From Botryllus schlosseri (lineage: Eukaryota): DNA of 64,000 nucleotides. The stretch lies in NCBI GenBank assembly GCA_051294905.1, contig CM119378.1, positions 15,376,001-15,440,000 on the forward strand, given 5' to 3'. The position numbers and the translations under genes were made by a program. Position 1 is the first letter of the stretch. Every line of letters begins with the position of its first letter. Positions 10,980 through 29,497 of this stretch are shown here, piece after piece. Below the pieces are notes generated by a model that did no database searches, had not been told where the DNA came from, and was given only the letters and a program-made list of their open reading frames with translations.

Positions 10980-12584
10980 GTAGTACCGCGGTACTGTACA
11001 ACAAGTTACTAGTCTGCGCTCGAAATTATCGGACCACGATATCCCATATCTATATCTCCCACATACTAGGATATGCCACCTAATTTTCATGTTATTTTAT
11101 ATTCTGTTAGTTTTAAGCAAGTGGTTCATCATGACCATTTTACATGTTGGATTTAGGCTTACGTGTTCAAGGTCAAAGTGGGTTGTTTGATGTCGTCTTG
11201 GCTAATTCCTACCGATGGCAATCTTGTGATTATTATGAAATTATTGAGTAAGTAAGCCAAAAACGTCATTGCGAACGCTTCGCCCGCCTAGTTCGGCCAA
11301 GTCACGGTCGGATTACGCCTGGTCATGGAAACACGGCCGACATGTACAACGCATGCGTCATGGCCTTTCGGTCGTCCGTCGGCCGTGCATGGAAACGAAG
11401 TATATGATTCTACCTTCCAAAGAGCCATACATGTCAGTCAACTGTAAGTCACAATTCGTGATGTCATGGTAACACAAATTTGAACTCAGTACATGGAATT
11501 CGTCGTGTGCGCCATATTTACTCTTCAAAAACTCGTACTAATCATGCTGGTTCCCTTATTTGAGCAAATGAGCATGCGAAACTTGTGTTACATACATCTT
11601 TTGTAAGTTCTTGGTAATTGTATTACAATGAGAACCGTATGGCCAGGGGAGGCAGTGAGGCAGTGTTTCACCTGTCGTCGGGATTAGAGAAATAAAATTT
11701 TGAAACCTTCAATGAATTATTGGTATTTTCTATCGATATTCAAGAATGGCTACATTTTGAACATTTTTATTCATAAAGTCACGCCATTTGCGTATTTATT
11801 GTTCGAAAAAGCGCTAAAGGAGAGGTAGGCACAGGTGAGGCATGGACGGACCAAACCTCACCTGTGATAGCACAAATCCTCTTAAATATCTTAGAATATA
11901 TGATAACTGAAAATAATCGAATGCAATCGTTGCACTAATTCCGAAAATCTAAATATCGATCGACTTCCCAATTCTCAAAGTATTCGGCGGTAACATAACG
12001 TTGTACTATACACGCCTACATTTTAACGGCAGTGCTACTAAGCTACTTAGTAATCAAGAACGTGGATGGCTATATGGCGTTGTGTCTTTGTATGTAATAT
12101 GAATTTGTAATTGTGAGTGTCACTTTCATCGCAGTTCATTTTTCGCCGTAGATAGGGAAGACAATATGTATTTGAAAACAGCATTGTCATAGAGACGTCG
12201 CCATGTCTGCTATTCTTTTTGATCAACGTATCGTGCAAACCAAGATGTCGAGGCGGTCGCCGTCGCGATCGCAACTTAAATTTGATTATTTTGAAGAGTG
12301 GGGTCCGAGCCCCTGACCCTAAATACGTCACTGTCTTGACCTCTCAATGTGATGTTTATACTGCAATGAGAATAATTATTCTGACCGTGGTGAATAATTA
12401 TTATCAAGTTCCTGCATATTGATAAATTAAGTACAAAAATTAAACAGTTGACAAAAGAGCCATATCTTATACCCAAAAGAGCCATATATGGCTCGCAAGA
12501 CATAGGCTCCCGACCACTGGCCTATAGCATTCTAAATGATGCCAAACTCATTTAGGAATATCGATACGGCATATTGGTAATGTT

Positions 12585-15500
12585 TTATCCCACACGGGTC
12601 TGTCTACCAAAGATGCATTGAACGCGCGGATCTCCAATCAGAACAAATCCCGGATCACAAGAGAAGTAGCAGTAAGTGCCCACGCTTCCCGACCCTACGC
12701 GTACTCGCGCTCCATTATTTAGACCAGCAAGCTCCTCACAGCGACCTGTAAGTAGAGAAACTCCATAATGAGATTTACATCTGTATATATTTTCAGCAAA
12801 CATGACTAATCTTTCACAACTATTATAGCGCGCACTCCAGAAATGATTAGATTTCCTCACGTCCGCATATTGGTGGATCAGCAGACCATCCAGTGGAATT
12901 GTTGCACGTAATTACGGCGTCTCCAATTAGTCGCACCCCGTCCGGACAGAAGTAGGTACATACGACCCCGTCTCCACTGCTTATACACGATTTTCCTCCC
13001 CGTTGAGATCCCATTGGGATATTATTACAAGGATGTCCTTGCCGATTTTTAGACGGCAAAGTTGCATGTGTATTCTTCGGCTTTCCTGGGACTGTCAACA
13101 ACAGGTTGTACTCGATCAGTTACAATTTCAGGCTAATAGGGTTGCCATACGTTCGGACATGTCCGTAATTTCAGTGTTGAAACTGCGTCCGGGAGGAAAT
13201 GCTAAAATATGCTTAAATGTCCGGAATTTTTCAGACTTGAAAGGAGCTGAAAATTTTTTCGTGAATCAACATAAACAATAACTTTTTCTGTGGCAGATTT
13301 ATGCTACTTGAAATTTTTCTTCGCGCCATGCGCGATTTAGTGTCCCCTGCACTCGCAAAAAATACAATAAAAATATTTACAAAAATAACCTTCATTTGCG
13401 GAAATTAATCGCAATTATGAGAGACGATAAATATTCCTAGTGTCGATTAAGGCCGTTTTGATGCTTCAGTCAAAGACGTTGATTCTCAACCTGGGGATCA
13501 TTTGCCTTTTTTCTGGGGATGTTGAACGTAATCAGCTTCCAAAATAGGCCGTGAGCAAGTCTGGGCAAAGGTGCTGACCGGCTTAGGTCCCGTGCTGACC
13601 TTTTTCAGTACTCAACTCACCTCACAAAATTTCGAGGTGAGCTATGGAACATTTTCAAATTAGAATTGAAGTCGCGATCATAAAAGGTTCGAAACCACCG
13701 GATGTGCAACCTACTGGTGCGGACCGGCATTTCGGCTCATGAATATAGTTTTATACGTGTGACATGGACAAGACTTATCGATGTACAATTATCCAGGGTT
13801 GTAATGACTCGAGTCATTTTCTCAAAATCCAGCAATGACTCGACTCGAGTCAATCTGTGTAATGACTCGACTTGGACTCGAGTCATTGCGAATGACTCGG
13901 ACCAAGTCATATGATTCGAGACTCAGGCGGCCAAGACCGACATTTCATTGTAATTTCGAAGAATAGTACTCTAACCACACTATTGGTATTTCATCTATTT
14001 GTAGCGGTACGTGAAAATGCGACCAGAAAATGTTAAAAGGGAGAAAAATTAGTATATAAATGCGAACCGTTGGTTATCACCAAACAGTTTTAAAAAGTGG
14101 GTTAAACAAGACTTTAACTGGAAACTGAGCAGTCAATTTATTGGCTTGGACTCGAACTTGGGTCATAATACCATGACTCGGACTCGACCCTCTGCTCGCT
14201 GACTTGTACTCGGATGTGACTCGGTGGCAAATTGAAAATGACTCGACTTGACTCGAGTCACAACTATAAAGGTGAGATTGACTTGTGACTCGAAGCCTTG
14301 TGACTTGATTATAACCCTGCAATTATCGTCCCTGCATTATCGAAGTCATCACCTCCACCAGCTCTACCGCTATAACTCTAATCACGTGGGCGGAGAGAGG
14401 ATTATAATATTATATAATATATCTAAGAACCAATGGTAATAACAGATTTCATTCACGAAATTTAACAATTTTTCGCGCTCGGCACGAATAGTAACCAGAG
14501 GCAAGCCCCTAAGAAGTAGAGTTTATCACCCTATGGTGACCCCAGACCAGAAGTTTTTTTTGGGTGGAAGGGGGCTGACAAAGTGTTGTTTCGGTCCTGG
14601 TTACAATATGTAGGCCTAACAACCACAGAACTGTGCCGACCAAACAGTGTTTACAGCAGCCAGGGTGTCAAACATACGACCAACCAGATACTTTTATACG
14701 GGTCGTGAAGAAGTTTATTGCAGACCATATGTGAGAATGCCAACCATATAGCATTCACCAGAGATCAAATTAGAGATGACCCAATAACATGAGAGATAAT
14801 TCACGGCCTATGCCTAGAAATCCTCTCATCTTTACAATCGATAGGCAAAGCATTGATAGTGTGACATCAAATTGACAGACAATGTGTTTATACCTCATTT
14901 TAAAATCGACTAGCAAGCGCTAAAGAGTATCCGGATTTTGAACCACAAAAATAATGTAACCATAGGCTAAGGCTCACGGGCATCCTATATAATATCACCT
15001 GTGAATGAAATTATGGGCGATTCTGTAGTATTTCCTTCGACTGGAGCAGCTACACACGTCGGAGTGGGGCTGAAGAATGGCCTCAATCTTCTTTTGATTC
15101 TTCTACACGTACTTACGCTGTTGCCTTTCATGGCGTAACCTGTTTACGGCAGGTATACAAATGGAATTATAGATTCTTCGAATATATTATATAGACGTCA
15201 AATTATCATCCTTTTCATTTGGCAGCTACGACGTGTTGAGCTGCGTCACCATAGTTATAAAGATAGCGATCCTTCCAGGATCTATGAGTCACAATTAATT
15301 TGAATAACAAATGAGAATGGCATTTATTAGAATGACAAATAATAATTCAAGTTCAGGTCGGTCGGTTTTGTTTGACTGATAACTCGTTTGAATGACAGAT
15401 GATTCGAGTTCATGTGTAGGTCGGTTTCATTTAAGTGACAATGCCTATAATCGACATTCGAGCAGATGTATTCTCCTTCTAATTTTTCGGACGACTCAAG

Positions 15501-18500
15501 TATGTTTTGCCTACCTACACTACTTGATCATGTGGTTACGTATTTGGACTACTTACACTTCTACTTATAACAGTTTTTCAGTAAAACACGTTGAATTTTG
15601 TAAAGTAAGAAAGTAGTTTAGGATATGTAACCATCATCAGAGGTAGTCATTTACGAAGTATTTCTACTTCTATCTTCCAGCTTTCAGTTTCCGAGGCAAA
15701 ACTAGGCATTGAATACTTACTTTTTCAATTACTTAGAAGCCGTTACTTCCACGTCTATACTTGAGTACGAACGGTGACTACTCTGGCCAATGGCCACCTA
15801 TGTCCATCATTTTTATGAGTAATATCGTTCTAATGACTGGGCGAAATAGCTCATCGCTGTTTTATTCCTCCTACTACTCTCAACATCAACATCTTAATTA
15901 TTCTTAGCGGTTTCAAATGTTTCATCGTTCCACGGCACAAATGTTTTTTTGCATATCTGGACTTTATGTATAAAGTAGACGTAGCCTACTTAATGTTGCG
16001 CCTTTCCCGAAACAGCTATTTTGGGGTGTCTGAACTTGCGAGCAAAGCATAAACTCATGATGAATGAATAATTTTCCATCGTTTGGTGATTACAAATTTC
16101 TATATCTATACCTGTATAGTCTGATGGCCACAAATGAAGCAAAGGCTTGCTAAACCAATACTTATACAAATACGTACATATAGAACTCTGCACATTTGCA
16201 GTGTGCAGCAGTGTGCGATGTTCAGTGGATATTGTATATTATCATAGCCGGACTTGTACTACTGGATTTTCAAAATGCGCAACTAGAACTAGAACTAGAA
16301 TTATACTCACTATTTTAAACTCGCAACTATAGAGATACAACTACTCACTTTTCAAAATCCGCAACTAGAACGAGAACTAACGACCTTTGAAAATCCGCAA
16401 CTGTATCAACCACAGAACTATACCGGCGTTCCCAGACGCACACGTAATACATAGTAATGTAATAAATGTGTAGTGAGATGTGGAATGCGGTAGATTTTTG
16501 TTCTTGTGACTCAGTGAAAATTACGGGTTTCTCGAAAGCTTACATATGTGTGTAATTGAATAGTATATTCATATTAAAATGAACCCGAATATTTTCTGCT
16601 GACACTCGTCAGCGATAATCATCAGCAACTAGTAGAGAATAAATATGTGTGTAAGAATTCCCAGGTTATTAAAGGTTAAGAATCGCACTGAACTAGAGTT
16701 AATTCTAGAAATAGAACTACTCGTTTTTCAATATCCGAAGAGCTTCTTGTAGGCACAGAACTTCAATATACAATTGAATAATATATTCATATTGAAATGA
16801 ACCCGATTATTTTCGGGTGACACTCGCCAGCGGTATTCGTCAGCAACTAGTAGAGAATTGGAAAGAACGCTGTAGCCTATATCAACAATCGTATCTCGAA
16901 ATATGACGTCACCAGCATGAAATGAGGTCTGAAATAAAATAGCTGAAGAGCTTCTTGGAGGTACAGAACTTCAGTATACAATTAAATAGTATATTCATAT
17001 TGAAATGAACCCGAATATTTTCGGCTGACACTCGCTTGTATGTTCTTTCCAATTCTCTACTAGTTGCTGACGATTACCCCTGACGAGTGTCAGCCGAAAA
17101 TATTCGGGTTCATTTCAATATGAATATACTATTTAAAATAAAATAGCGCTCAATGTACTATTTTAAGACGGTACACGAATTCCTTTTGTTGACAAAGCTT
17201 GGGCTGATGTATTTTGATATGATTTTCAATATCCGCAACTAAAACAAGGACTATTACTAAAAAAACGTTAGTTAGTTGACTGTCAACAAACTATATGGAA
17301 AGTTTTTACATGTACTAGTATGATCAATTGATCATGGCATATCAATTCAACCTCTGATATGGAATATATCAAATGTTAGTTTGAGTATATTTTTAAAGTT
17401 CAGCTCGAGTGTCAATCGCGTCTCGAGGTCAAATTTAATCTGGCTTGCAGCGTTTGTCATAGAATGGCGCTTACTGCTAGAGACACGAACAGCTATTGCT
17501 TGCGAGGCAAGGTAATATATAGGGATACGATCCTGATGTCCAAACATGGAACACGAGTTTTGGGAACACAATAGAAATTGCGTATGATGCTGCTCGAAAC
17601 AACTTAATTTATATATGTCACTCAAACTATAGATAACTAACCTTCGTAGGTTAGTTATCTATACTACTACGTAGGTTAGTTATCTATACTACTACGTAGG
17701 TTAGTTATCTATACTCAAACGAATAGAACGACAATTTTAGATGCGTCACTTAAAAACTCTCGATTACGTCACTTGCAGTTGATCGCTCATTCAGGGAATA
17801 TCGCAATCCATTTGGAAGTATATAGCAGGCGCTACGAATCACCAAGTTGTATAGGATGGGATTGGAATTCTCTCTGCGTTATGCCTCAGCATGGACCGGC
17901 TCCGGGATCCACATTTTGCGGAGTAGCAACTGGAAGTTAAACTAGCCTATATGTAGCCGTCAGGTTGGCAATTTAGAGTTTTTAGAAAATCATATATGAG
18001 CCGCTGGAAATTTGTGACTCCAATGACCAGCACGTTACATATGATCGAGATTATTGGTTACGGTCATGAGCAGGACAGATCTTGACAAAATCAACAACAT
18101 CCATAACATGCATGCATACATACCGAATTCACAAATGAACTGACAACTCGATCCAATTTCTCCTAGAAAATTTGTGAATGTGCATTCCATCTCGCCGTGA
18201 ACAGGCGCGATTGGCTTCTTAACACATCGGTTCATTGGCCTACTGCGTCCTGATAATAATGTTACAAAACAATCAGTGCTTTTCCAAATGTACGTGACAA
18301 TGAACCAACCTATGTTGACATCCCCTTGACACCAATTTTTTTTCTTGTGACATTCTAATCCACTGCAGCAGCATCGACAAACCGAATTCGGTCGCCTTTT
18401 CCGACATTGCAATTTATTCTATAGTGATATGCGTAGGGTTATACACATGTCCATTACAGCCGCAACCCTAAACCCATAATTGGCAGGGGGGGGGAGCTCG

Positions 18501-20324
18501 AACTGACACAAAATTATTTCGTAAATCAAAATAATGTCGAATATTTTTCGGCAGAATTATCTGCCTAAATATCTTTCTTCAAGTCTCGCGCGATTTAGCG
18601 TCACCAGTTTTATGGATTTTAGCATCAGTGCCTAAAAAAACTAAAACTAATAACCACAAAAACACATAAGTTACCGAAATGAGTCTAACTGTATTCGCAA
18701 TTTTGAGAGAGAGGTATATTCTTGATGGTGCTTGAGGACGCAGGGATGCTTTAGTCTAGGGGTGTAAACCTGCTGGTCCGGGACAATCAGGCATACAGGC
18801 ATTTCGGCTCATGAGAGTCATGAATAGTATTGAAGATGTGGCATGAACATGATTAAGCTGTACAGTAGAGTTGATAAAAAATAACTCTTTTTTTCCGGAT
18901 TCCAGTAATTCACTGCTTGAATTGTCAGGTTACCCTACAAAGGGCTGCTCACCAAATTTGGTTCTATTCTAACTACTATAAGCCGCTAGAGACCCAATTA
19001 AAATTTTTAATTTATTATTATTATTTTCTGTCAACACCATGAAATTGTGGAGTTGTCTTCAAAAACGATGCAGAACAAATTTGACTCGATTCCAACCATA
19101 GAAGCGAAGTTATTAGTGCTTTTCATTCATAATTCTGGGAATACCCACCGCATGGCCTACTAAAAACTAGTAGACCATGCCCACCGTCAATGCTATTTTT
19201 GGAAATTCAGAACTTTCAACTGCACTTCTACAGATTGGAATTGAGTTAAATTTGATTTGCATCGTTTTTGAAGACAGCTCAACAATCTTATGAGGCTGAC
19301 AGAAAAATTAAAAAAAGATCAATTTTTCATAATATATTAAAAATTTAAATTGACTCTGCGGCGGCTTATATTCGTTAGAATTTAATTAAATTTGGTGTGC
19401 ACCGTTTTTTAGGGTAGCCTGACAATTTAATCAGTGAATCACTGGAATCTGGAAAAAGGTATTTTTGAACAACCCTACTCCATGCTTGCATGCTGACCTG
19501 AAGTTTGTCATTGTTGCAGGCTTGAGACTGTTTGCAACTTTTGGTGATCATTGATCTTCCTCGAAACCCACTGTGGTATCTTATTTCCGTTGCGCAAACC
19601 ATCTGCATGAAGAAATTAGGCTATCAACCCACGGTTGAGCGGAAAGTATTGTGCTGTATAACGCGGATGTGACCCAATATCTCGAACCGTAGGGCAGGCA
19701 TCGTTTCTCCACGACGTGATTGTTCGTCACAAGGCCAATTCTCCACGGGACAAAATTTGGGATGCTTTTGGGCGGTTCCGGGACCATGAGCAAAATAAAA
19801 TACATACGTTCAAAATCAACCCGCAGTAGCTTTCAGTTAATGCCGGGCTTATCAAATTGTGCAGTTGTGCACCCGTTCAGAAAGGGCTATAGGTGCCCTC
19901 ATTCTCTTTGAGCAGATGGAGATAGCCAGCGAGCTGTGCAAAGTGCTTGTGTCTGCGCACCTGGGAATGATACCATGATGCAACTAATACTTACTTCTTG
20001 ATCAGATTGGCAAGTTATTATTTCGCCTTTCTGTACGCATTCGTCAACGGAACGAGCGTTCGTGCATCTAAGACAGTCCAATCCTACACAGGCAAGATGC
20101 AGAGATTTATAAAAATGATGACACTGATTTTTATAATTAGATACAATCCATGTTTTAGCTATTTCTTATGTCTTGGCCGAACGTTGAACAGACCTCTGGG
20201 CGGCATCTATCATGGAATGATTTCTAAAAATAATTGAATTATTTCAAAGCTCACCGTCAACATCGCTGAACGTAAACAAAAATCCAACAAGAAACGTTAT
20301 TGTAGTTGTACAACACGGCCTCAT
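12585..20324 (-). CDS. Secreted LU (Ly6/uPAR three-finger) plus sushi/CCP protein, 8 exons, about 341 aa (signal peptide, LU, 2 complete and 1 truncated CCP)
   Basis: Exons (minus): 20324-20255, 20083-19995, 19602-19498, 18418-18310, 18249-18124, 15139-14999, 13085-12861, 12745-12585. Total 1026 nt, phases consistent. Motifs LDCLRC..ECVQKG..TC..ITKSCKQ..CRCCCSGLECH, then GSSCQFICEFGYAMKG and CTYFCPDG..WSADPPIC. The 3' end is uncertain. Confidence 0.82.
13794..14319 (-). mobile_element. hAT-type MITE, TIR CAGGGTTGTAA
   Basis: Perfect 8-bp TSD CAATTATC. Opposite orientation to the copy at 7855. Confidence 0.9.
16545..17135. repeat. Three direct copies of a 90-130 bp core spaced about 210 bp apart, followed by one inverted copy
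   Basis: Core ATAGTATATTCATATTGAAATGAACCCGAATATTTTC.GCTGACACTCG.CAGC at about 16560, 16780 and 16985. Reverse complement at 17041-17135. Confidence 0.8.
17628..17713. mobile_element. 86-bp family A hairpin relic with two extra 25-bp right-end duplications
   Basis: 36-bp palindrome plus 2x(CTACTAC-GTAGGTTAGTTATCTATA). Perfect 7-bp TSD CTCAAAC (17621-17627 / 17714-17720). Confidence 0.8.
18966..19381. mobile_element. Pogo/Tigger-like foldback MITE (long imperfect TIRs ATTCTAAC..TATAAGCCGC)
   Basis: About 170-bp imperfect inverted arms. The termini resemble pogo-type TATAAGCCGC ends. No clear TSD. Confidence 0.6.
19151..19179. mobile_element. 29-bp TIR-only hairpin relic (family B, CATGG..CCATG)
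   Basis: CATGGCCTACTAAAAACTAGTAGACCATG with perfect 7-bp TSD CCCACCG. Confidence 0.78.
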
Positions 20325-21421
20325 ATTTTCCACGACCTGCATCTTTTCCTCGCAATTTAGAAGTAAATAAATGGGCTTCTCGCAGTTGATGTCTTATGTG
20401 AGAGTCTACGTGACTCAGGGTGATCTCGAACGAATTGATTACTTCCGACTTGTGTCCAAATACGAGTCGAAGCTATTCGGTAGTGATTCAGAGATGAATA
20501 GGATTTCTACGCGAAGACATTCGCGGCGGAATCACGTGGTTGACCCGTGTGCGTACGATTGAACGTATGTCACGTGGCTTCATACCCTAATGTTGAGAGT
20601 AGCTAGTCTTCAATCCGTTGTGACATCACCTGCATAATAACTCCATTCCGTTTACAATTCAAAATTATCGACAAATTGTTTTGTAACATTTCATCGCGGA
20701 ACCAGGGAAGCTTTCGACGCAATTTAAACATAATGTCTCGTCGGATCATAGGTTTTGTGAAGTATGGCATAATTAGTTCCAGGATATCACAGTTTTGTCA
20801 TATTTTCTGCTGTCCATTGTAATGATAAGATCGAAGTAGAATATTCATGGACAATCAGTCACGCAGGTATTCATAAACACATGACATTAAGTGCTGAGAA
20901 TTCAATGTCAATTCTGTATACCTGGCATGTATCCAACGGCATATGCTTTAGAAACACTCAGCACCAACGCAGCGCAAAATTCACAAGAAGTGAAGATGTA
21001 GGTTTACAGTTCCGCGACACGTGGCGCTTTGCCTTGATTAATACTCCCAGAATAATTTGTCATTTATTTGGTGATAATTAGAATTCACAGTAATAATAAT
21101 TTTACTATAAGAATGTGCGATCGTGGATTTATCGTGAATAATATTTGATATCACTTGATTACTGTACTATGGTTGGACGAGTATTCATTTAAATTTAATA
21201 CAAACGCAAAATCGGCGATCCTTCTTAATATAACGTCAAACCGTTGCTGTAACGGGATATCAGACGAAAATGCAGGTTTAAATGCTATAGGCTACTGACG
21301 ATACCACAGGCAAAGCTATCTCGCCTTTTTCTTATCACACATGACTTTCATAAAATGAATGGTCGAGTGTTGTTGGATCTTGGGCTGTCGGTATTGGTGT
21401 CGGTTATTTAAGGATTCCATC
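20325..21421. promoter_or_regulatory. Shared divergent promoter region of the two LU-sushi paralogues
   Basis: ATGs at 20324 (-) and 21422 (+) are 1.1 kb apart with no TE recognised between them. Geometry only. Confidence 0.5.
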
Positions 21422-24400
21422 ATGAAGTTGGTCGTGTGCGTACTTGCCTTGTTGAGCGTCCTCGAAAAAGGTAAGTGGAACATGCTGCATTTCTCATCAT
21501 TTTGCGTGTTGTTGTTACTGTTGTTTGTTAAACAACAAATTTGGTGCCTATCACCTGATGATCTTTTGCACCACGGTCGTGAATCATGTTAATCACATAA
21601 AATGTAGTTACGCTAAATAATTCCATATTACTGTAAATCCTTTCAACAACAGGGCTTGCACTGAAATGCTGGACCTGTAATCGTGCTTTGACGAACGAAG
21701 AATGTCAGATTAAGGGTTCAATCGCCACTTGTAAGCCAAATCAAGTAAGTTTAAATATGGGAAACTTGAACATCATCGGGGATATTTTTATGCTATACCA
21801 TGAGGTCGATTACATTCCGGTGCCATTATTTATAGGAAATCTTTCTCTGAGAGCCTATTTTCCAATTTCAAAGGAAAATCGACAAGACAGGCAACGCGAT
21901 TGCATATCAGCTTGCAAAATGTAATTATATAATAGAATAAATGCAACTATGCAATAGCTAGAACTATGGTTCCGCAATCATGTCACGTGCTGTGTTGGCG
22001 AGTATACTTTTTTAAATAAATACTAAAACAATAACATATTACTTGCTTCTGTGACATAGTATCCGATAGTGAGCCACGGTATCACTGTTGAAGTTTGTAA
22101 ACATAATTTAACCGACAACATCGGGTGAAAAGAGGATACGAAATGGCAATAAATAGTTCTAAATCTCGATAAACCAGATAAACAAGATGGTTGCCGTAGG
22201 CAAGGAAACAAGTTTAGTACGTCATCCGTTTGTGGTGGCAATATATCTGACACCTCGGGTTGCAATATTATCCGTCGCAAAGCCCAACAACGCACTGGCA
22301 AAGCCTTCTGTTGTGGTCGGTAGTTTATTTTAAAGTCCGATCGTTTGATGCTAAACGCGATGATATTTCAGCATCCGTTCATCCTTTAAATTACTCTTAT
22401 TCACACCTTTGATGGATGTGAATGCTTTCACGATGTCACTTCTTTCACAGGCTTGCGTAAATCAAGAAACCACCAGCGTCGACGGATCGAGATATCAGAT
22501 TACGAAGCGCTGCCAGAATAAGCAATTCGAAGCGTGCCGTCTCAATGATCGAAGGGTATGAATCCTAGAAAGTTGTCTTTAACTGTACAGTGTACATGAT
22601 GATAATTTTTGGCGTCATTGTTACGCAGAACCCGGGAAATTTCCGAACGTTCTGCAAGCAATTTCCTAAGAATACTATCTGTTCATGCTGCTGCGACACG
22701 GACCGCTGCAATGGCCCGCAGGTTGAATGCAAAAATGGTGAGTGATGTCACGTTACCGTAACATGCTCTGTCGGGTCGGGAAACTATATGTGGATCGCGA
22801 GTCAAATATGGCTCATTTGATGATGGCGAATGCGATTAGAAGAATAGAAGTCAACAATTTTCAAGTGGAGCAATGGCATGACAATCTTTTGTATAAATTG
22901 TCAAGAGAAAACTTACATCCGTATAGACGGTCGTTGCACGTTATGTTACATATTTCATCGTGAAGTAGCCAAACTATAACTCGACCACCGGTGTAAGCTT
23001 GGTATACACGCTAAATCAATTGTTTTGGCAGGCGGACCAAATAGATATAACAACTCATTCGGTATTGGTAACGGCGATACGTAATAATCATATGACGAAC
23101 TGAAAGCAAATCGTGTTAAATGTCAGGATATGCATATTTTGGTGCTATTTTCAGAAGTGGTCACAGTAGTCAAGAAAGCTACTCAAGTAAAAATAGAAGT
23201 GGCGAAACTAAAATCTACTCAAGTACGAGTAGAAGTTGTCCTTTCAAAAGCATCCTAAAACTACTTCAGGTAGAAGTAGCGACGCTGAAATCTACTTGAG
23301 TAAGCAAGTAAATAAGTATAGTGAAAAGCAGTCGTAAATACACTCTTATGGGCAGTCAAAAGCCGGAAACTGAGCACTTCGAGCGGTACAGAGAGCTGGA
23401 TTCGTGCTGCTCAGTACAAAGTTTCCACAGATTAGAATTAGACCGCATAGTGGGATGCAAATAATAGTTTTGCTTTGGAGAAGCGGCTCTTAACTTTTGT
23501 TTACCCTTGTACAGTTCAATTTCAAATAATGTCATGGAATTGTACCCTCCGCCTTATTGTAAGGCCTGTAGTTCACGCGAAAAGCAATACGGAGTTGTAT
23601 CAAAAACGGCATTACCGATTTGCGCGGTGATTGTTACGTGAAACAACATAGCTCGTAAAATGCCATTTAATTTTACTTCGTAATTTTAAACAAAAGAACT
23701 CAGATTAATTAGAAGACCTCTCTGTAACGATACCGTGCATATATTTGATATATTTGATATAATTTGTCCATACAGTTTCAACGGTGGTTGACGCTCGACG
23801 GTCTAACGCTAAAAAGTCAAGTACTACTTTTCCCCTATTTGAACACTCGCTTTACGGCTAGAATGCTAGATTACGATTAGATATTCCTACTTTTTTTTCC
23901 GAGCCACATTGTCTGTGATGAAACATATCATATGGGTGACAATACAGTATGAAATTAACCTGCTATCTAAATGATACTGACCATCACTTCCGTGAAAATA
24001 TACTTGTTATTCAATTTATATTTTGCGCGGAGCACGACGAAAATTCTGAACTTTCCTTAACTTTTGTGATAGTTACATTATTGTCGGTACTCCCAGGAAA
24101 AAAAGACCCTAAATTTCTCCTTCTCATTCTCTCTCTCTCTTTCATTGAAAGAATATAATACTTCTACTTCACAAACTGTTGATAAGTATATAAGTAGCGA
24201 AAAATTAGGTCAACTTGAGTAAGTACTGGAAGTAGATCAAAACTACTTGTGTACTTAAAAAAGTAGAAGTACTTCGTTACTGACCACCTCTGGTTATTTT
24301 GGCCCTTCATTCAGTTATTTTGTATTTTGTTACACTATATACCTTGTTCGTATTACATTCCTTGTCTGGTCCACATTTAAACTACCACTTGTAGCATATA

Positions 24401-27400
24401 GTTTGATTTCAGCAGATCGGGCCATCCAAGCTACATAGATTGTACCGTAAAATCTGTCGCAGGCTCCCCATTACCCAAAATTATGATCTTCGCCTGTACG
24501 AATATACGGTACATGAATCGTCCAAAATATACAGACGTCAATAGCGAGAGTTACACGGATTTCATTCCGACACAAATCGCTGGTGCCGAGGGTGATAACG
24601 GAAATCTGCTGTAGATACAACGTGTATAAATCAACGAACATGGCATCAGATTTAAATTTCATTGATCCACTGTACTTGTGACCTGTGATAATCACTATTT
24701 TTTTTAACCAAAATCCTTAAATTCCAGTTGTGACTTGCCGACAACCCAACAAACCAGGAAACGGCCGCATACAATGCCAACAACCAATCACCTACGGAAG
24801 CACTTGTAATATCATATGCAACAGGGGCTTCCGACGGGTTGGCCCGAAAACTGTAACCTGCACTAATGGAACAAGTCAAGGATACTGGAGTCCACGCCAA
24901 TCGATCGCTTGTGTAACCGAGTCTAGACAGCCAACTCAACGACAACCGAGACGATGTCCAAAACTGATCGCGCCCGTCAACGGCGGCATGGTGTGCGAAA
25001 ATCAAGGCCGCTTTAAGAGTGAAAGCTCATACAATTACATGGGTACCATATGCGCATTTAAATGCGATATCGGATATTTCCGCAGCGGATCGGACACGGC
25101 TCAGTGTCTGGATGGAGGCAGATGGAGTGTGATGGTTCCCAAATGTCAAAAAGGTACGTGCAATTCTCCTCCTCAAGACGCTAACCGTATCGACAGCTGC
25201 TCCGACGGTAATTATTTCGGAACCATATGCGATATGAGCTGTCGTGCAGGTCACAGGCTCGTGGGCGCATCATCAGTTTCGTGTCAAGTTTTAAATGAGC
25301 TTGTCAGACAGGGGCAATGGTCGACGGAATTCCCTCGCTGTGTCAAGGCAGAATGCAGGCCCCGATTAACGAGACCCGTAAACGGCGCCATGTCATGTAC
25401 GCGAGGGAATACGCTTGGAAGCTTGTGTACCTTTTCGTGCAAAAAAGGATTCCAATTAACAGGCTTGGAAATGACCGTGAACGGCGCGGTCGAATGCGTC
25501 CAGACCGGAGACTCCGTCGTTTGGAATGGGGAAACCCCGCGATGCATGAGACTGCAATGCCCACGGCCTGACATGCCAGAAAACGGAAATGTAGTTTGCG
25601 GCGGAGATGGCCGCTTGGGTACCAAGTGCGTTTTCAGTTGCAATCCCGGGTTTGACTTGGTCGGGACTCCGAATGCAACAGTGCTAGGCGAATGCGTCCG
25701 TGCGGTTGGTGCCGGAGAGGTAACGGCTAAAATGACCGTTGAATCGATCGCGTGTGCTGAAGTACGCTGCCCGCCAGAACGAACGGCTCCGAAGAACGGA
25801 CAGGTGTACTGTTCAAGAGTGAATTTACAAGACAGCATATGCATCTTTTCGTGCAATGAAGGTTACGATATGGACGGTACCACGGATAGAATGGTTACAA
25901 ACATCTGCAACTACGCAGCCGACGGTGATGGAGTTGGAAGATGGAGCGCCGATCCTCCGACATGCGATACAAGGTTTTTTTGCGACGTGACACATGGTGA
26001 TCCTGAAAACGGAGCCGTGGATTGTTCAGACGGTTCTTTCTCGGGAAGTATTTGCACATTTACATGCGATGACGGATTTGAGCTTTACGGTGCGTCGGTT
26101 ATTACTTGTAGAGATAGAAAGTTCGATGGCGATGCCAAAGTGGAATGGACTGACGAAGCACCGGTATGCGTTGCTAGCACCTGTCCCGAGCTGTGGTACG
26201 ATCAAACGAGCATGATGGTTTCTTGCAATCGTGAAAAACAAGCTAACGGCTATCCAGTCGGGACTGACTGCACGTACCAATGTTCTGATTCAATATACTT
26301 CATTGATGCAACAGACGGATCGGCGAAAGCTATCACGTGCACCTCGAAAAATACATGGAATACACCATCGGCGCCGAGATGTATCTTAAAGAAATGTCCG
26401 CGACTGCCGAAGTTAGAAAACGGAAACGAGCCGATGTGTAGCAGAAGCAACTTCGTATCGTCGACCTGCGTGTTCAAATGCAACTCCAAGTACTCATTAT
26501 CTCACAACGAGGCAATCACCTGCGATTCTGGCGGACGAGGCGCCAAAGCCGGAAAATGGGATATTCAACCGCCAAAGTGTATACTGAACGAGTGTACGGA
26601 ACTTCCACCAACTCCCCGCAGGGGCGTTGTGAGCTGCTCCAACGGCGCTAAACTTGGCTCGATGTGTACGCTGCAATGCGACTCCGGCTACGCCCCTAGA
26701 ATTCCGGAAATCGACTGCCGAATGACGCAGCGCATGGTCGAAAGCAAAATGGTCGAAATGCCTTGGTTCGTGGATAGAGAGAACTTTTGCTGTTCCAAAT
26801 GCCTGTCCGAGTTATACATAACTTTGGCCGTGAATGCTCGGTACGAACGCGGTCTTCAGGACGTGGTCGACTTTGTCAAGATATTTCTCCCGCAACTTTC
26901 CCAGCGCAACAACCGCATTGTGTTCTCTGCGTTCTTATACAACTCCGTGGTCGACCAAGAGACGGTGATCGACCGATTCGAATTGAAGGAAAGCGACAAC
27001 CTGCCTGTTTTGTTGTCAATGCTCGTGGATTGGAGCGTGAAAAACGAGGGGAAAGGTAATATCTTGCTTGCTTTTTCCAAGTATTCGAGTAGATTTGCGT
27101 ACTTCTCGTACTTACCACAGTGGTTGTGTTTTAGGCCACTTCCACTTCTACTTTGGACAACTTTCTAGATTACTTTGGATTTATAAAGTAGAAAGTAGTT
27201 TTAGGACAAATTTGCATCACTTTCATGATCGAAATTATTATACGAACCGAGTGAAACCGTCCCGGTATCACGGTAACTAAATATATGGAAGAGTGCACCT
27301 ATATACGTGTGGCGCCATTTGTCATTATGTGTGACTCACGCAGATACATCTTACAATTTCCAGTAGCCATTTCCGATGAACTGGTGACAAAATGTGGCAC

Positions 27401-29497
27401 CCTAATAAAATCTAAGTTTTAAAACTATTATTTGAGTAGTTTTCGGACCTTTCATTTACTATTTCCACTAGAAATTGTTTTGACAGGTCTTGGATATCGC
27501 TACCTCTAATTGTAGAAATGTAGGAATGTAGAGTAGAAATGTACGGCGTTCCTTCAACTTCTACTTCGTAACAAACGCTTTGCTTTGACCACCTCTGAGT
27601 ATAGGCAAGTGGTAAAAGTGTTGGTGAAAACGATTTTGCGCTCTATAAGATTTCCCTGTCCTCTGACTTGAAACGAATAGTTTAAAGGGGTTCTAAATTG
27701 CATTCCCAAAATCGCGATGGCCGAAACTGTTGCTTACGTCACGCTAAATATTTTAAAACAGGAAACAACAAAGAGTGAACTTTACACAATCACTAAAATA
27801 TTCCGTTGGGCTGATATGATACCAATACATTTCAAATTTTGCCGGATGGTCGCAATCTGCTGGTCCTGGGTATCATCTGACTGCATTGATGATCTTGCCC
27901 GTCGCTCAGTCAGACTCTGCATTTGGGATTTCCAGATCGATGTGAATTTTCCGCAATAATAAAAGTTTCTTGCGTATAGAGACAGGCATCAACCCTGTTG
28001 ACAATCACTGTTTCACTCAATTGAGGTTGCATGTCTGAAAGATCGTATGCGCTAAGGCTGATATAACGTGTAATGAATAACATTGTCCGTTAATCTCGCG
28101 ATGCAGCGTAGCCTACACAAGTGACATAGATAACGTGAAATATAACCTATATATATAGGCTATATATAATATATCGATGGTATTGCTGCGGCATACCCTT
28201 TTGTTCCACCAAGTGCCGGACATTCAACCTTGTCCCGTCACGGGATTTAGGATCGCCACATAAATACGACTTGTTTACGAAAACATCTTACACTATGTTA
28301 CAATACATCGAGCACATATTTATGCATTGCATTTGACGTCTGTACACATCTTGAATTTAGAACCTAACGCCATGGGAGCCCTGCGGTACGCAAACTCGAA
28401 TTTTTTCGCTACCTTGAACCCGGGTGCTGTAAATTATTTGATAATTGCCGGTGACGAATCTCCCAAATACGACACTGGTGCACAGCTACAAAGCATGGAT
28501 GAGAGAGGGATCAATGTGAGTATTGAGTATAGTTATTAAATTAATTTTGTAGTGTTATAGTGTACTGTACACTGTACAATGTACACTATAGGCTACACTG
28601 TACGACTGTACGTGTACGTGTACATTGAGCTTACTCTCTGTTATTATGGAATTGATAATTTACATATTGGTGTTATAGTTAATATAATGTTAGAAATGTC
28701 AGAGTTTTGGAAAAGGGATGTACATTGTACAACCTGTTTGTCAAGAGGAAGATATTTTAATAACTTGGTGTGAGTGACCGCGGACCGCACACATGCTTTC
28801 TATGTAGTAGCCTAGTTGCAAAGCCCACCATCTAGTTAAGCATTGGTGACGGTATAGGGGCGATATATTGGACTTAAAGGAAATCGTGCAAAGCCCCAAA
28901 ATATTTTTCAGGTTATTGAATACATTTTGTCAACATATTTATGCGCAAAGTTAACGCTGCCACATTTTTAGCAATTTTAGTGATTATGGCCCGTTTCTCA
29001 GCTCACTTGAGCTTAGTTTAAAACCTACCAGACGAAGTTAAATTAGACATACAGCCAATGTGCGGGCCACCGCACACCATTCAAAATTGGCACTTCTTCA
29101 CGGGCAGCGCGGGTTGCACAGCCCTGTTACAGTGTGGAAATAAAGCTGAAGGCGAGTGAAAATTAATTAATATATTAGGTCCCACTGATCCAACTACCAG
29201 TTCCTAATCCTCCATTCATTTATGGAAAGAGACTGGCTGTTGTTTGTGTTACAACCCCGAAAGTGAGAGCTCTCCACGCTGTGCTGTATTCTGTCTTAAT
29301 ATTTGCATATAGGTTACCCGTCCGCTCATTTTCAGATAATTGCCGGCGTCACAAATGACTTTGCCAGAATAACATGGGGAAAGATTCTTGGAGACGATGG
29401 AACTGCAACCAATCTGAACGCGAATGAAATCATTAGCATAATGGATAACGCAGCTATTGACAGCGGATGTTCCACCCTATCCCCAGAATGCGCTTGA
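21422..29497 (+). CDS. Secreted LU plus 10x six-cysteine sushi/CCP plus degenerate VWA protein, 7 exons, 999 aa
   Basis: Exons: 21422-21470, 21653-21744, 22451-22555, 22629-22737, 24728-27055, 28361-28515, 29336-29497. Total 3000 nt, phases consistent. Signal peptide MKLVVCVLALLSVLEKG. LU domain LKCWTC..ICSCCCDTDRCN. Ten C-x-C-GS/TxC-xFxC-xGF-C-W-PxC modules. VWA-like tail (DFVKIFL..NAMGALRYA..YLIIAGDES..RGINIIAGV). No TM segment. Confidence 0.88.
23152..24292 (+). mobile_element. hAT-type non-autonomous element, TIR CAGA(A/G)GTGGTCA, AAGTAG-rich subterminal repeats
   Basis: TSD GCTATTTT/GTTATTTT (7/8). A partial relative ends at about 27597. Confidence 0.75.
27070..27597 (+). mobile_element. 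Partial copy of the 23152-24292 MITE family inside intron 5 of the LU-CCP-VWA gene
   Basis: CTACTT-rich repeats ending in GACCACCTCTG. The left TIR is not seen. Confidence 0.6.

What the first reader, a model, noticed from the sequence alone, without database searches (positions are those of the whole stretch)
12585..29497. Head-to-head paralogue pair encoding secreted LU + sushi (+VWA) proteins: candidate complement-regulator or decoy module
Seen: two divergently transcribed genes whose first four exons share phases (1-0-0-1) and near-identical sizes (70/89/105/109 vs 49/92/105/109 nt). Both encode signal peptide + LU domain, followed by about 2.5 or 10 CCP modules; one ends in a VWA domain. 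Established: LU is the CD59 fold, CCP arrays define CD46/CD55/factor H, and CCP-VWA is the non-catalytic half of factor B/C2. I do not recognise an LU-CCP-VWA fusion from vertebrates. Inference: a lineage-specific secreted immune, adhesion or gamete-recognition pair, possibly a protease-less factor-B mimic with a co-expressed short partner.
Basis: partly seen in the sequence, partly recalled or inferred. Interest (0 to 1): 0.7.

Follow-up and report, generated by a model that had tools for sequence, protein, structure and literature searches.

The report
Ascidian LU-sushi-VWA gene pair
The two back-to-back genes are real members of a large, sea-squirt-specific family of secreted proteins (a Ly6/uPAR head, a rod of sushi modules and usually a von Willebrand A tail); one is conserved and expressed, the other looks like a decaying copy, and nothing ties either to complement control.

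Summary
The + strand gene (21422-29497, 7 exons, 999 aa) encodes a signal peptide, one LU domain, ten six-cysteine sushi modules and a C-terminal VWA domain. The - strand gene (20324-12585, 8 exons, 343 aa) encodes a signal peptide, LU and three sushi modules.

Transcript contigs from three studies show the long gene's exon joints, including LU exon 4 joined to the sushi exon. The long gene is the orthologue of Styela clava XP_039254673 (44% identity, same 7 exons, all 78 cysteines kept). Its orthologue group has lost the metal-binding MIDAS motif of the VWA domain.

The short gene had no transcript in four runs. Its last sushi module is frameshifted and has lost a conserved cysteine. It also lacks the fourth sushi module and the VWA exons found in its positional counterpart in Styela, so it is probably a truncated relic.

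The family has at least 30 LU-bearing loci in this genome and occurs in Styela, Clavelina and Ciona under automatic names such as "P-/E-selectin-like". Ci-sushi, a Ciona metamorphosis gene, probably belongs to it.

The complement-decoy and factor-B-mimic readings are not supported.

The parts
21422..21470 (+). Long gene exon 1: start codon and signal peptide. The 5'UTR reaches at least back to 21374.
   Evidence: Model. Contigs in X1 and X6 start at 21374 and 21382 and join to exon 2. This is the only hydrophobic segment in the protein.
21653..21744 (+). Long gene exon 2: first third of the LU domain (LKCWTC... motif).
   Evidence: Joints to exons 1 and 3 are seen in contigs of X1 and X6. LU profile match.
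22451..22555 (+). Long gene exon 3: middle of the LU domain.
   Evidence: Joints 21744>22451 and 22555>22629 are seen in X1, X6 and X9.
22629..22737 (+). Long gene exon 4: end of the LU domain (CSCCCDTDRCN motif) and the linker.
   Evidence: A loose end after 22737 in X1, X6 and X9 reads the start of exon 5.
24728..27055 (+). Long gene exon 5: ten six-cysteine sushi/CCP modules and the first half of the VWA domain.
   Evidence: Pfam Sushi E=7.8e-51. Ten modules by cysteine pattern and iterated search. 56-58% identical to the transcript-derived proteins P0001 and P0002.
28361..28515 (+). Long gene exon 6: middle of the VWA domain.
   Evidence: Model. VWA profile scores 86 bits over residues 804-998. 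The exon is conserved in the Styela orthologue.
29336..29497 (+). Long gene exon 7: end of the VWA domain, a C-terminal cysteine pair and the stop codon.
   Evidence: Model; alignment. No hydrophobic tail.
20325..21421 (.). 1.1-kb region between the two divergent start codons. It could be a shared promoter region, but only the long side shows transcripts.
   Evidence: Coordinates. Depth is zero on the short side in four runs.
20255..20324 (-). Short gene exon 1: start codon and a weakly hydrophobic N-terminus (no 19-residue Kyte-Doolittle window above 1.6), taken as a signal peptide by analogy with the family.
   Evidence: Model; hydrophobicity scan. No RNA coverage.
19995..20083 (-). Short gene exon 2: LU part 1.
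   Evidence: LU profile scores 78.8 bits over residues 23-120.
19498..19602 (-). Short gene exon 3: LU part 2.
   Evidence: 53% identical to the matching exon of the Styela divergent neighbour.
18310..18418 (-). Short gene exon 4: LU part 3 (SVCRCCCSGLECH motif).
18124..18249 (-). Short gene exon 5: first half of CCP1.
   Evidence: The module is split at the same position as in the Styela neighbour.
14999..15139 (-). Short gene exon 6: second half of CCP1 and a linker.
12861..13091 (-). Short gene exon 7: linker and CCP2 (six cysteines intact).
12548..12745 (-). Short gene exon 8: CCP3. It is disabled by a one-base frameshift after the third canonical cysteine, so the stop falls at 12585-12587. 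The shifted frame still reads W-DKTL-P-I-C. A family-conserved cysteine is Arg.
   Evidence: this is the only W..P.C motif in the 12.6 kb downstream, about 10 codons after the cysteine. NGARVR here against NGNRVC in Styela.
12100..12530 (.). High-copy dispersed repeat of about 430 bp, lying just 3' of the short gene where the Styela counterpart has its CCP4 and VWA exons.
   Evidence: 3452 first-look candidates, with copies of 77-81% identity on many chromosomes; no CCP or VWA exon downstream.

Best explanation
What it is (shown). The window holds a head-to-head pair from an ascidian-specific, much-expanded family of secreted mosaic proteins. Family members have a signal peptide, one Ly6/uPAR (LU, three-finger) domain, a rod of 1 to about 25 six-cysteine ('selectin-type') sushi modules, and usually a C-terminal VWA domain of the collagen-VI/matrilin kind.

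The long gene is a conserved, spliced and expressed member. It is the orthologue of Styela clava XP_039254673. Its orthologue group kept the VWA fold but lost the MIDAS metal site.

The short gene is the positional counterpart of the gene that lies divergent to that orthologue in Styela, which there encodes LU, four CCP modules and a MIDAS-bearing VWA domain. In this genome it has lost CCP4 and the VWA exons, carries a frameshift and a lost cysteine in CCP3, and shows no transcripts. It is most likely a decaying relic, or at best a truncated LU-CCP2 protein.

How the long protein most likely works (inferred, about 35-40%). It is a soluble extracellular adaptor or ligand. The LU head, the best-conserved domain and nearest to LYPD1 and LYPD6, binds a cell-surface receptor. 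The ten-module sushi rod acts as a rigid spacer and secondary binding surface. The metal-independent VWA tail docks the protein to matrix or to another family member. The result would be a matrix-tethered cell-cell communication signal, as proposed for the probable Ciona family member Ci-sushi in metamorphic apoptosis and tail regression.
For: Gene models are. Transcript contigs from three studies join long exons 1-4, and LU exon 4 reads on into the sushi exon.

Orthologue evidence:
- Full-length intronless transcript contigs from two related species encode the same LU-CCP10-VWA protein, 55-56% identical over the full length.
- Styela P0020 is 44% identical end to end and has the same 7-exon structure.
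- All 78 cysteines of the mature long protein are conserved in the four orthologues. Identity is 50-66% in LU, 47-59% in the CCP array and 34-47% in VWA.

Domain evidence:
- The LU family profile hits solved LYPD1 (E=3.8e-8) and LYPD6/6B.
- The AF2 model of the LU domain (pLDDT 81) matches LYPD6, LYPD6B, the TGF-beta receptor II ectodomain, GPIHBP1 and uPAR.
- The AF2 model of the VWA domain (pLDDT 87) matches collagen VI alpha-3 N2, integrin I domains and vWF A domains.
- MIDAS (DxSxS...T...D) is kept in most family members but lost in the long protein, P0001, P0002 and P0020.
- The long protein has no transmembrane segment and no hydrophobic C-terminus.

Family evidence:
- About 21 representative clusters have LU-CCPn-VWA and about 10 have LU-CCPn only.
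- All named carriers come from Styela, Clavelina or Ciona.
- This genome has at least 30 loci with LU exons of the family.
- A paralogue at C8:1.84 Mb has the same LU-exon, big-CCP-exon and VWA layout.

Short gene evidence:
- Zero depth on exons 1-5 in four runs.
- A frameshift in CCP3 and a lost cysteine.
- No further CCP or VWA exon downstream, and a high-copy repeat at the 3' end.
- The divergent neighbour in Styela is collinear with it: 36% identity over 337 aa, the same intron phases, the same split of CCP1, and it continues into CCP4 and a MIDAS-bearing VWA domain.

Ci-sushi evidence: the published qPCR primers encode QACEANEA and SVCRCCC. SVCRCCC is an exact LU motif in 34 of the fetched family proteins; QACEANEA is found in none of them and only resembles the consensus K-Q-x-x-A-C-x-N-N. 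Its role in tail regression is reported in PMC4389792, PMC8495957 and PMC13225635.
Against: - No binding partner, localisation or phenotype is known for this gene, so the mechanism rests on analogy.
- I could not fetch the Ci-sushi protein. Its membership rests on two primer-encoded motifs only; it is not P0023, P0037, P0039 or P0046.
- The tissues of the expressing runs are coded and unknown.
- Silence of the short gene rests on four runs, three of them assembled contigs, which show presence and not absence. The fourth was sampled at 6% and barely shows the long gene either.
- The frameshift could be an assembly error or an allele, and it could not be checked against reads.
- Orthology of the short gene with the Styela neighbour is positional and structural. 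LU identity of 44% is no higher than to some other family members.
- Family expansion and clustering would also fit an immune role.
Confidence: 0.6

Rival explanations
1. Complement regulator or decoy. The sushi array would bind C3b or C4b like CD46, CD55 or factor H. The CCP-VWA part would act as a protease-less factor B mimic, and the LU domain would act like CD59.
For: - Long sushi arrays are typical of complement regulators.
- The family is expanded (at least 30 loci) and clustered, as immune families often are.
- In Botrylloides, an unverified 'multiple Sushi and VWA' gene marks phagocytic blood cells (PMC12212465).
Against: - MIDAS is lost throughout the long orthologue group. From general knowledge, not tested here, factor B binds C3b through its MIDAS.
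- The family's VWA domain is nearest collagen VI, PTMP1, integrin I domains and vWF A domains. Factor B and C2 are not among the 60 listed of 83 sequence matches or the 50 listed structure matches.
- There is no protease domain.
- The sushi modules have six cysteines, as in selectins, not the four of complement regulators (the four/six distinction is from general knowledge).
- The LU profile matches LYPD1 and LYPD6, not CD59, and there is no GPI signal.
- The supposed partner is silent and broken.
Confidence: 0.12
2. Self/non-self or gamete-recognition molecule. A polymorphic secreted family member would be used for allorecognition or sperm-egg specificity.
For: - The family is lineage-specific, expanded and clustered.
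- Several differences separate the assembly from the RNA contigs in the LU exons. Three of the six listed single-base differences change an amino acid (V4I, N70H, R108L).
Against: - The long gene has a clear one-to-one orthologue in Styela, with all cysteines and the exon structure kept. That is unlike fast-turnover recognition loci.
- About 2% nucleotide difference is ordinary for ascidians (general knowledge).
- No gonad or tunic-vessel expression data are at hand.
Confidence: 0.06
3. The short gene is a working short partner. In this reading it is a secreted LU-CCP2(-3) protein expressed in a stage or tissue not sampled, acting with or against the long protein from a shared bidirectional promoter.
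For: - All eight exons keep open frames and GT-AG sites, and CCP1 and CCP2 are intact.
- LU-CCPn proteins without a VWA domain exist elsewhere in the family.
- The head-to-head arrangement is conserved in Styela.
Against: - Zero depth in four runs, three of which hold long-gene transcript contigs.
- CCP3 is frameshifted and missing a conserved cysteine.
- The Styela counterpart carries CCP4 and a VWA domain that are missing here.
- There is no 19-residue hydrophobic window above 1.6 at its N-terminus.
Confidence: 0.2

Closest known systems
Predicted ascidian 'P-selectin-like' / 'E-selectin-like' proteins, e.g. Styela clava XP_039254673 (P0020), XP_039254735; Ciona intestinalis XP_002125765 and XP_009861089; Clavelina lepadiformis XP_076816380
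   Same: They share the LU-CCPn-VWA architecture, the LU motifs (CWTC..., SVCRCCC..CN) and six-cysteine sushi modules. P0020 is collinear with the long protein at 44% identity, has the same 7 exons and has the same divergent neighbour.
   Different: These are automatic annotations only, and the names are misleading because the proteins have no lectin, EGF or transmembrane part. Most members keep MIDAS; the long orthologue group does not.
Ci-sushi (Ciona KH.C11.274, ci0100139289; Chambon et al. 2007, as cited in PMC4389792, PMC8495957 and PMC13225635)
   Same: It is a secreted sushi-domain 'cell-cell communication' protein of an ascidian. Its qPCR primers encode QACEANEA and SVCRCCC, the latter an exact LU motif of this family.
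   Different: The sequence was not fetched, so its architecture and its relation to the long gene are unverified. It is a paralogue at best, and its role (JNK-dependent apoptosis and tail regression) may not carry over.
LYPD1, LYPD6 and LYPD6B (vertebrate LU-domain proteins)
   Same: They are the best sequence-profile and structure matches of the LU domain.
   Different: They are single-domain and, from general knowledge, GPI-anchored. Here the LU domain heads a 999-aa soluble mosaic protein with no GPI signal.
Complement factor B / C2
   Same: CCP modules are followed by a VWA domain.
   Different: Factor B and C2 have three four-cysteine CCPs, a MIDAS-dependent VWA domain and a serine protease. 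Here there are ten six-cysteine CCPs, no MIDAS and no protease, and the VWA domain is nearest collagen VI.
SVEP1 and selectins
   Same: They are extracellular mosaics with CCP arrays. SVEP1 also has a VWA domain, and selectins have six-cysteine CCPs.
   Different: The long protein has no EGF, pentraxin, HYR, C-type lectin or transmembrane part, and it has an N-terminal LU domain instead.

Membership tests
Ly6/uPAR (LU, three-finger) domain superfamily | A disulphide-rich module of about 90 aa with an N-terminal LxCxxC motif and a C-terminal CCxxxxCN motif, recognisable by profile against known LU domains. | tested here: met
   Both window proteins have the motifs. The family profile A2 scores 73.6 bits on the long protein and 78.8 bits on the short protein. 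The same profile hits solved LYPD1 at E=3.8e-8 and LYPD6/6B. Seven relatives match Pfam Toxin_TOLIP.
Ly6/uPAR (LU, three-finger) domain superfamily | Three-finger beta fold. | tested here: met
   The AF2 model of the orthologue's LU domain (P0002:17-120, pLDDT 81) has LYPD6, LYPD6B, TGF-beta receptor II, GPIHBP1, PSCA and uPAR as its top Foldseek matches. The orthologue was modelled, not the window protein itself (65% identity).
Sushi / CCP module | Repeated modules of about 60 aa that match PF00084. | tested here: met
   Exon 5: E=7.8e-51 in 9 stretches. Ten modules of six cysteines each.
VWA domain | Rossmann-like alpha/beta VWA fold. | tested here: met
   Profile A3 scores 86 bits on long residues 804-998. 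The AF2 model of the orthologue's VWA domain (pLDDT 87) matches collagen VI alpha-3 N2 and integrin I domains at E of about 1e-8.
VWA domain | MIDAS metal site (DxSxS ... T ... D). | tested here: not met
   The long protein, P0001, P0002 and P0020 lack the two serines and the threonine. Most other family members keep DSSSS, GSGT and TDG.
Complement factor B / C2 | Three CCPs, a MIDAS-bearing VWA domain and a C-terminal serine protease. | tested here: not met
   There is no protease domain, there are ten CCPs and MIDAS is absent. The nearest solved VWA domains are collagen VI, PTMP1, integrins and vWF.
CD59 | A single GPI-anchored LU domain that blocks C8/C9. | tested here: not met
   The protein has 999 aa with no hydrophobic C-terminus. 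CD59 is not among the profile hits at E up to 1. C8/C9 binding is not testable here.
Selectins | C-type lectin, EGF, CCP modules, transmembrane segment. | tested here: not met
   Pfam finds only Sushi, plus VWA in the orthologues. There is no transmembrane segment. Only the six-cysteine CCP type is shared.
Regulators of complement activation (CD46, CD55, factor H) | Binding and decay or cofactor activity on C3b/C4b. | not testable with these tools
The CCP type and the flanking domains differ.
Ascidian LU-CCPn-VWA family (unnamed; 'P-/E-selectin-like' in databases) | Signal peptide, LU domain with the family motifs, six-cysteine CCP array and C-terminal VWA domain, with LU encoded by phase 1-0-0-1 exons. 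| tested here: met
   Architecture scan of 49 relatives. The long protein is collinear with Styela P0020 at 44% identity, has the same 7 exons, and has a conserved divergent neighbour with the same phases.

The most novel reading that the evidence does not exclude
The head-to-head pair has been kept since before this genome's lineage and Styela's split. It may encode two parts of one extracellular machine: a MIDAS-less ten-CCP member and a MIDAS-bearing four-CCP member that associate through their VWA tails. On this reading, the whole LU-CCP-VWA family, Ci-sushi included, would be a tunicate-specific ligand system in which matrix-tethered LU heads instruct neighbouring cells (apoptosis at metamorphosis, perhaps haemocyte behaviour). 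This genome would then be a natural knockout of the partner.
Probability: 0.1. Interest if true: 0.7.

Novelty: new variant of a known kind. Interest (0 to 1): 0.45.

Why it matters
All three modules are well known. Their combination (an LU head, a selectin-type sushi rod and a VWA tail) appears confined to ascidians. It is present in dozens of copies per genome and is hidden in databases under misleading names such as selectin, CR1, SVEP1 and matrilin.

Recognising it as one family does three things. It corrects those names. It gives a structural frame for Ci-sushi, one of the few genes reported to be required for metamorphic tail regression. It also offers a testable idea: LU domains as matrix-tethered ligands.

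For this locus, the practical result is that the long gene is a sound, conserved and expressed gene, while its neighbour should probably be annotated as a pseudogene or truncated copy. The complement-decoy idea should not be carried into annotation.

Tried and rejected
- Pfam on the full orthologues gives no LU hit at E up to 0.1. The LU call therefore needed the family profile and a fold model.
- phmmer of the long-group VWA domain against the PDB found nothing significant. Only the fold search recognised it.
- A search for further CCP or VWA exons across the window, using seven family proteins as queries, found none outside the two genes.
- I tried to tie Ci-sushi (KH.C11.274) to a fetched Ciona protein. 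Chambon 2007 is not held. The supplements lack the identifiers. A region search with the P0023 LU domain gave only 5 hits. No fetched protein contains QACEANEA. The link therefore stays at the level of primer-encoded motifs.
- Literature searches for the LU + sushi + VWA combination in tunicates found no description.
- The spliced window proteins could not be sent to the large searches, to Pfam or to the structure tools, because they have no single reference. Orthologues (P0002, P0001, P0020) and single-exon references were used instead. The window proteins were analysed only in local scripts.
- Recent inverted duplication as the origin of the pair is rejected. The two proteins are about 25% identical, and the same pair exists in Styela.
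- dN/dS was not attempted. The orthologues are 44-58% identical, so synonymous sites are presumably saturated.

Full report
**Observation**

I rebuilt both genes from the sequence.

The + strand gene has seven GT-AG exons: 21422-21470, 21653-21744, 22451-22555, 22629-22737, 24728-27055, 28361-28515 and 29336-29497. It encodes 999 residues.

The - strand gene has eight GT-AG exons: 20324-20255, 20083-19995, 19602-19498, 18418-18310, 18249-18124, 15139-14999, 13091-12861 and 12745-12585. It encodes 343 residues.

The start codons lie 1.1 kb apart on opposite strands.

**Domains**

Pfam finds Sushi in exon 5 at E=7.8e-51. The cysteine pattern gives ten modules of six cysteines each. From general knowledge, six-cysteine CCPs are the selectin type. 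That probably explains the automatic 'selectin-like' names.

Pfam did not recognise the N-terminal domain in the full orthologues. I therefore took the LU region of orthologue P0002 through the 1.84-billion representative library, aligned 52 related domains (A2) and tested the resulting profile:
- It hits solved LYPD1 at E=3.8e-8, and LYPD6/6B.
- It scores 73.6 bits on the long window protein and 78.8 bits on the short one.
- An AlphaFold model (pLDDT 81) matches LYPD6, LYPD6B, the TGF-beta receptor II ectodomain, GPIHBP1, PSCA and uPAR.

So the LU call is right, but the nearest relatives are the LYPD proteins, not CD59.

The C-terminal 190 residues match a family VWA profile at 86 bits. The orthologue's model (pLDDT 87) matches collagen VI alpha-3 N2, integrin I domains and vWF A domains.

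The long protein has one hydrophobic segment, at the N-terminus, and no transmembrane segment or GPI-type tail. It is therefore secreted and soluble.

**Transcripts**

One call of read laying was allowed, on 18100-24099, with runs from four studies.
- Contigs in X1 (1430 nt) and X6 (2878 nt) join long exons 1-2, 2-3 and 3-4 exactly at the predicted sites.
- In X1, X6 and X9 the sequence running on after 22737 is the start of exon 5 at 24728.
- LU and sushi exons are therefore spliced together in this species.
- Independently, 3.1-kb intronless contigs from two related species encode full LU-CCP10-VWA proteins that are 55-56% identical over the full length.
- Short-gene exons 1-5 have zero depth in all four runs, including X6, where the long transcript has depth 84.

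**The family**

Of 49 proteins related through the LU domain, about 21 representatives have LU-CCP(1-25)-VWA and about 10 have LU-CCPn only. Every named carrier of the combination is an ascidian: Styela clava, Clavelina lepadiformis, Ciona intestinalis or C. savignyi. Their automatic names include 'P-selectin-like', 'E-selectin-like', 'CR1-like', 'SVEP1-like' and 'matrilin-2'. The only named non-tunicate hit is a sea-cucumber protein with four LU domains and no CCP or VWA.

This genome (495.5 Mb; the window is C8:15,376,001-15,440,000) has at least 30 loci with LU exons of this type. Several paralogues have a large CCP exon, and the one at C8:1.84 Mb has the same LU-exon, big-exon and VWA layout.

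**The long gene's orthologue group**

Styela XP_039254673 (P0020) is collinear with the long protein at 44% identity. It has the same seven exons, 57/93/102/108/2316/153/159 nt.

All 78 cysteines of the mature long protein are conserved in the four orthologues. LU is the best-conserved part (50-66%) and VWA the least (34-47%).

In this group the MIDAS residues are gone. Most other family members keep DSSSS, GSGT and TDG. The MIDAS-bearing VWA domain of paralogue P0008 is nearest by sequence to collagen VI, mussel PTMP1, integrin I domains and vWF. Factor B and C2 are not among the 60 matches listed.

**The short gene**

As the assembly reads, its third sushi module stops after the third canonical cysteine. 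A frame shifted by one base reads on as ...VDRPVWDKTLPICR. That is the missing W-x4-P-x-C end of a sushi module, and it is the only such motif in the 12.6 kb downstream.

A cysteine conserved in the family's six-cysteine modules is arginine here (NGARVR, against NGNRVC in Styela). No further CCP or VWA exon exists downstream. A repeat of about 430 bp, with thousands of copies in the genome, occupies 12100-12530.

In Styela, the gene lying divergent to P0020 (595 aa; Sushi and VWA by Pfam) is collinear with the short gene. It shows 36% identity over 337 residues, the same intron phases and the same split of CCP1. It then continues into a fourth sushi module and a MIDAS-bearing VWA domain.

The head-to-head pair is therefore old. 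The copy in this genome has lost its 3' end and is damaged.

Caveats:
- The frameshift could be an assembly error or an allele.
- LU identity to the Styela neighbour (44%) is no higher than to some other family members, so the orthology is positional and structural.
- Contigs show presence and not absence.

**Function**

Nothing here measures function. I found one probable functional study of a family member. Ci-sushi (KH.C11.274, ci0100139289, annotated 'P-selectin-like') is reported to be a JNK target needed for the apoptotic wave and tail regression at Ciona metamorphosis (PMC4389792, PMC8495957 and PMC13225635, all citing Chambon et al. 2007).

Its published qPCR primers translate to QACEANEA and SVCRCCC. 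SVCRCCC is an exact LU motif in 34 of the fetched family proteins. QACEANEA is found in none of them and only resembles the consensus K-Q-x-x-A-C-x-N-N. I could not fetch the protein itself, so its membership is probable, not shown.

On this basis, my best guess (about 35-40%) is that the long protein is a secreted, matrix-docking cell-cell communication factor. The supporting points are the strong conservation of the LU head, its LYPD-like nature, the rod of sushi modules and the metal-free collagen-VI-like tail.

**Rivals**

- The complement-regulator / factor-B-mimic reading keeps about 0.12. CCP arrays and family expansion fit it. The lost MIDAS, the VWA type, the CCP type, the LU type and the silent, broken 'partner' count against it.
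- Recognition roles (allorecognition or gamete recognition) keep about 0.06.
- A working short partner in an unsampled tissue or stage keeps about 0.2.

**Novelty and score**

I found no paper describing the LU-sushi-VWA combination. The proteins are already in public databases as predictions, and the modules are ordinary. I rate the finding a new variant of a known kind of extracellular mosaic protein, with interest 0.45.

Noticed in passing
window 12100-12530: A dispersed repeat of about 430 bp with 3452 first-look candidates in the genome. Copies of 77-81% identity lie on many chromosomes. It abuts the 3' end of the short gene.
   Followed up: partly
window 18900-19480 (intron 3 of the short gene): A palindromic element whose two arms mirror each other around about 19200. 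Parts of it appear in contigs of all four runs, at depth 300-630 in X6, with loose ends leading into unrelated sequence. It is a high-copy, transcribed MITE-like repeat and not part of the gene.
   Followed up: no
window 23100-23299, and similar 'tacttctac / agtagaag'-rich stretches at 24130-24290 and 27070-27600 (long-gene introns 4 and 5): A repeat with very high summed contig depth in X6 (about 3500). Related short stretches recur in both long-gene introns and at about 15540-15780.
   Followed up: no
window 16540-17150: Three copies of a unit of about 100 bp ('tatattcatattgaaatgaacccga...tgacactcg...'), the last two forming an inverted pair. This is probably a foldback element in intron 5 of the short gene.
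   Followed up: no
window 13790-14290: A cluster of short 'gactcgagtca'-type palindromic repeats, probably MITE-like, in intron 6 of the short gene.
   Followed up: no
window 17625-17712: A tandem repeat of a unit of about 24 bp (ctacgtaggttagttatctatacta) in intron 5 of the short gene.
   Followed up: no
window 21431, 22517-22519, 22552-22555, 22664, 22697, 22705: Differences between the assembly and the RNA contigs in the long gene's signal peptide and LU exons. Three change an amino acid (V4I, N70H, R108L). A two-base variant sits at the end of exon 3.
   Followed up: partly
L021 (Styela clava OZ123517.1:7475452-7503795): The Styela orthologue of the long gene has a divergent LU-CCP4-VWA neighbour 4.1 kb upstream and an actin gene downstream. 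Clavelina also has adjacent family members (CAK8697519/20 and CAK8682038-41).
   Followed up: partly
PMC8495957 and protein P0046: The Ciona 'matrilin-2' XP_009862474 is really an LU-CCP-VWA family member. A Ciona 'matrilin-2' gene (KH.L132.4) is listed among metamorphosis genes expressed at the tail tip. Whether the two are the same gene was not checked.
   Followed up: no
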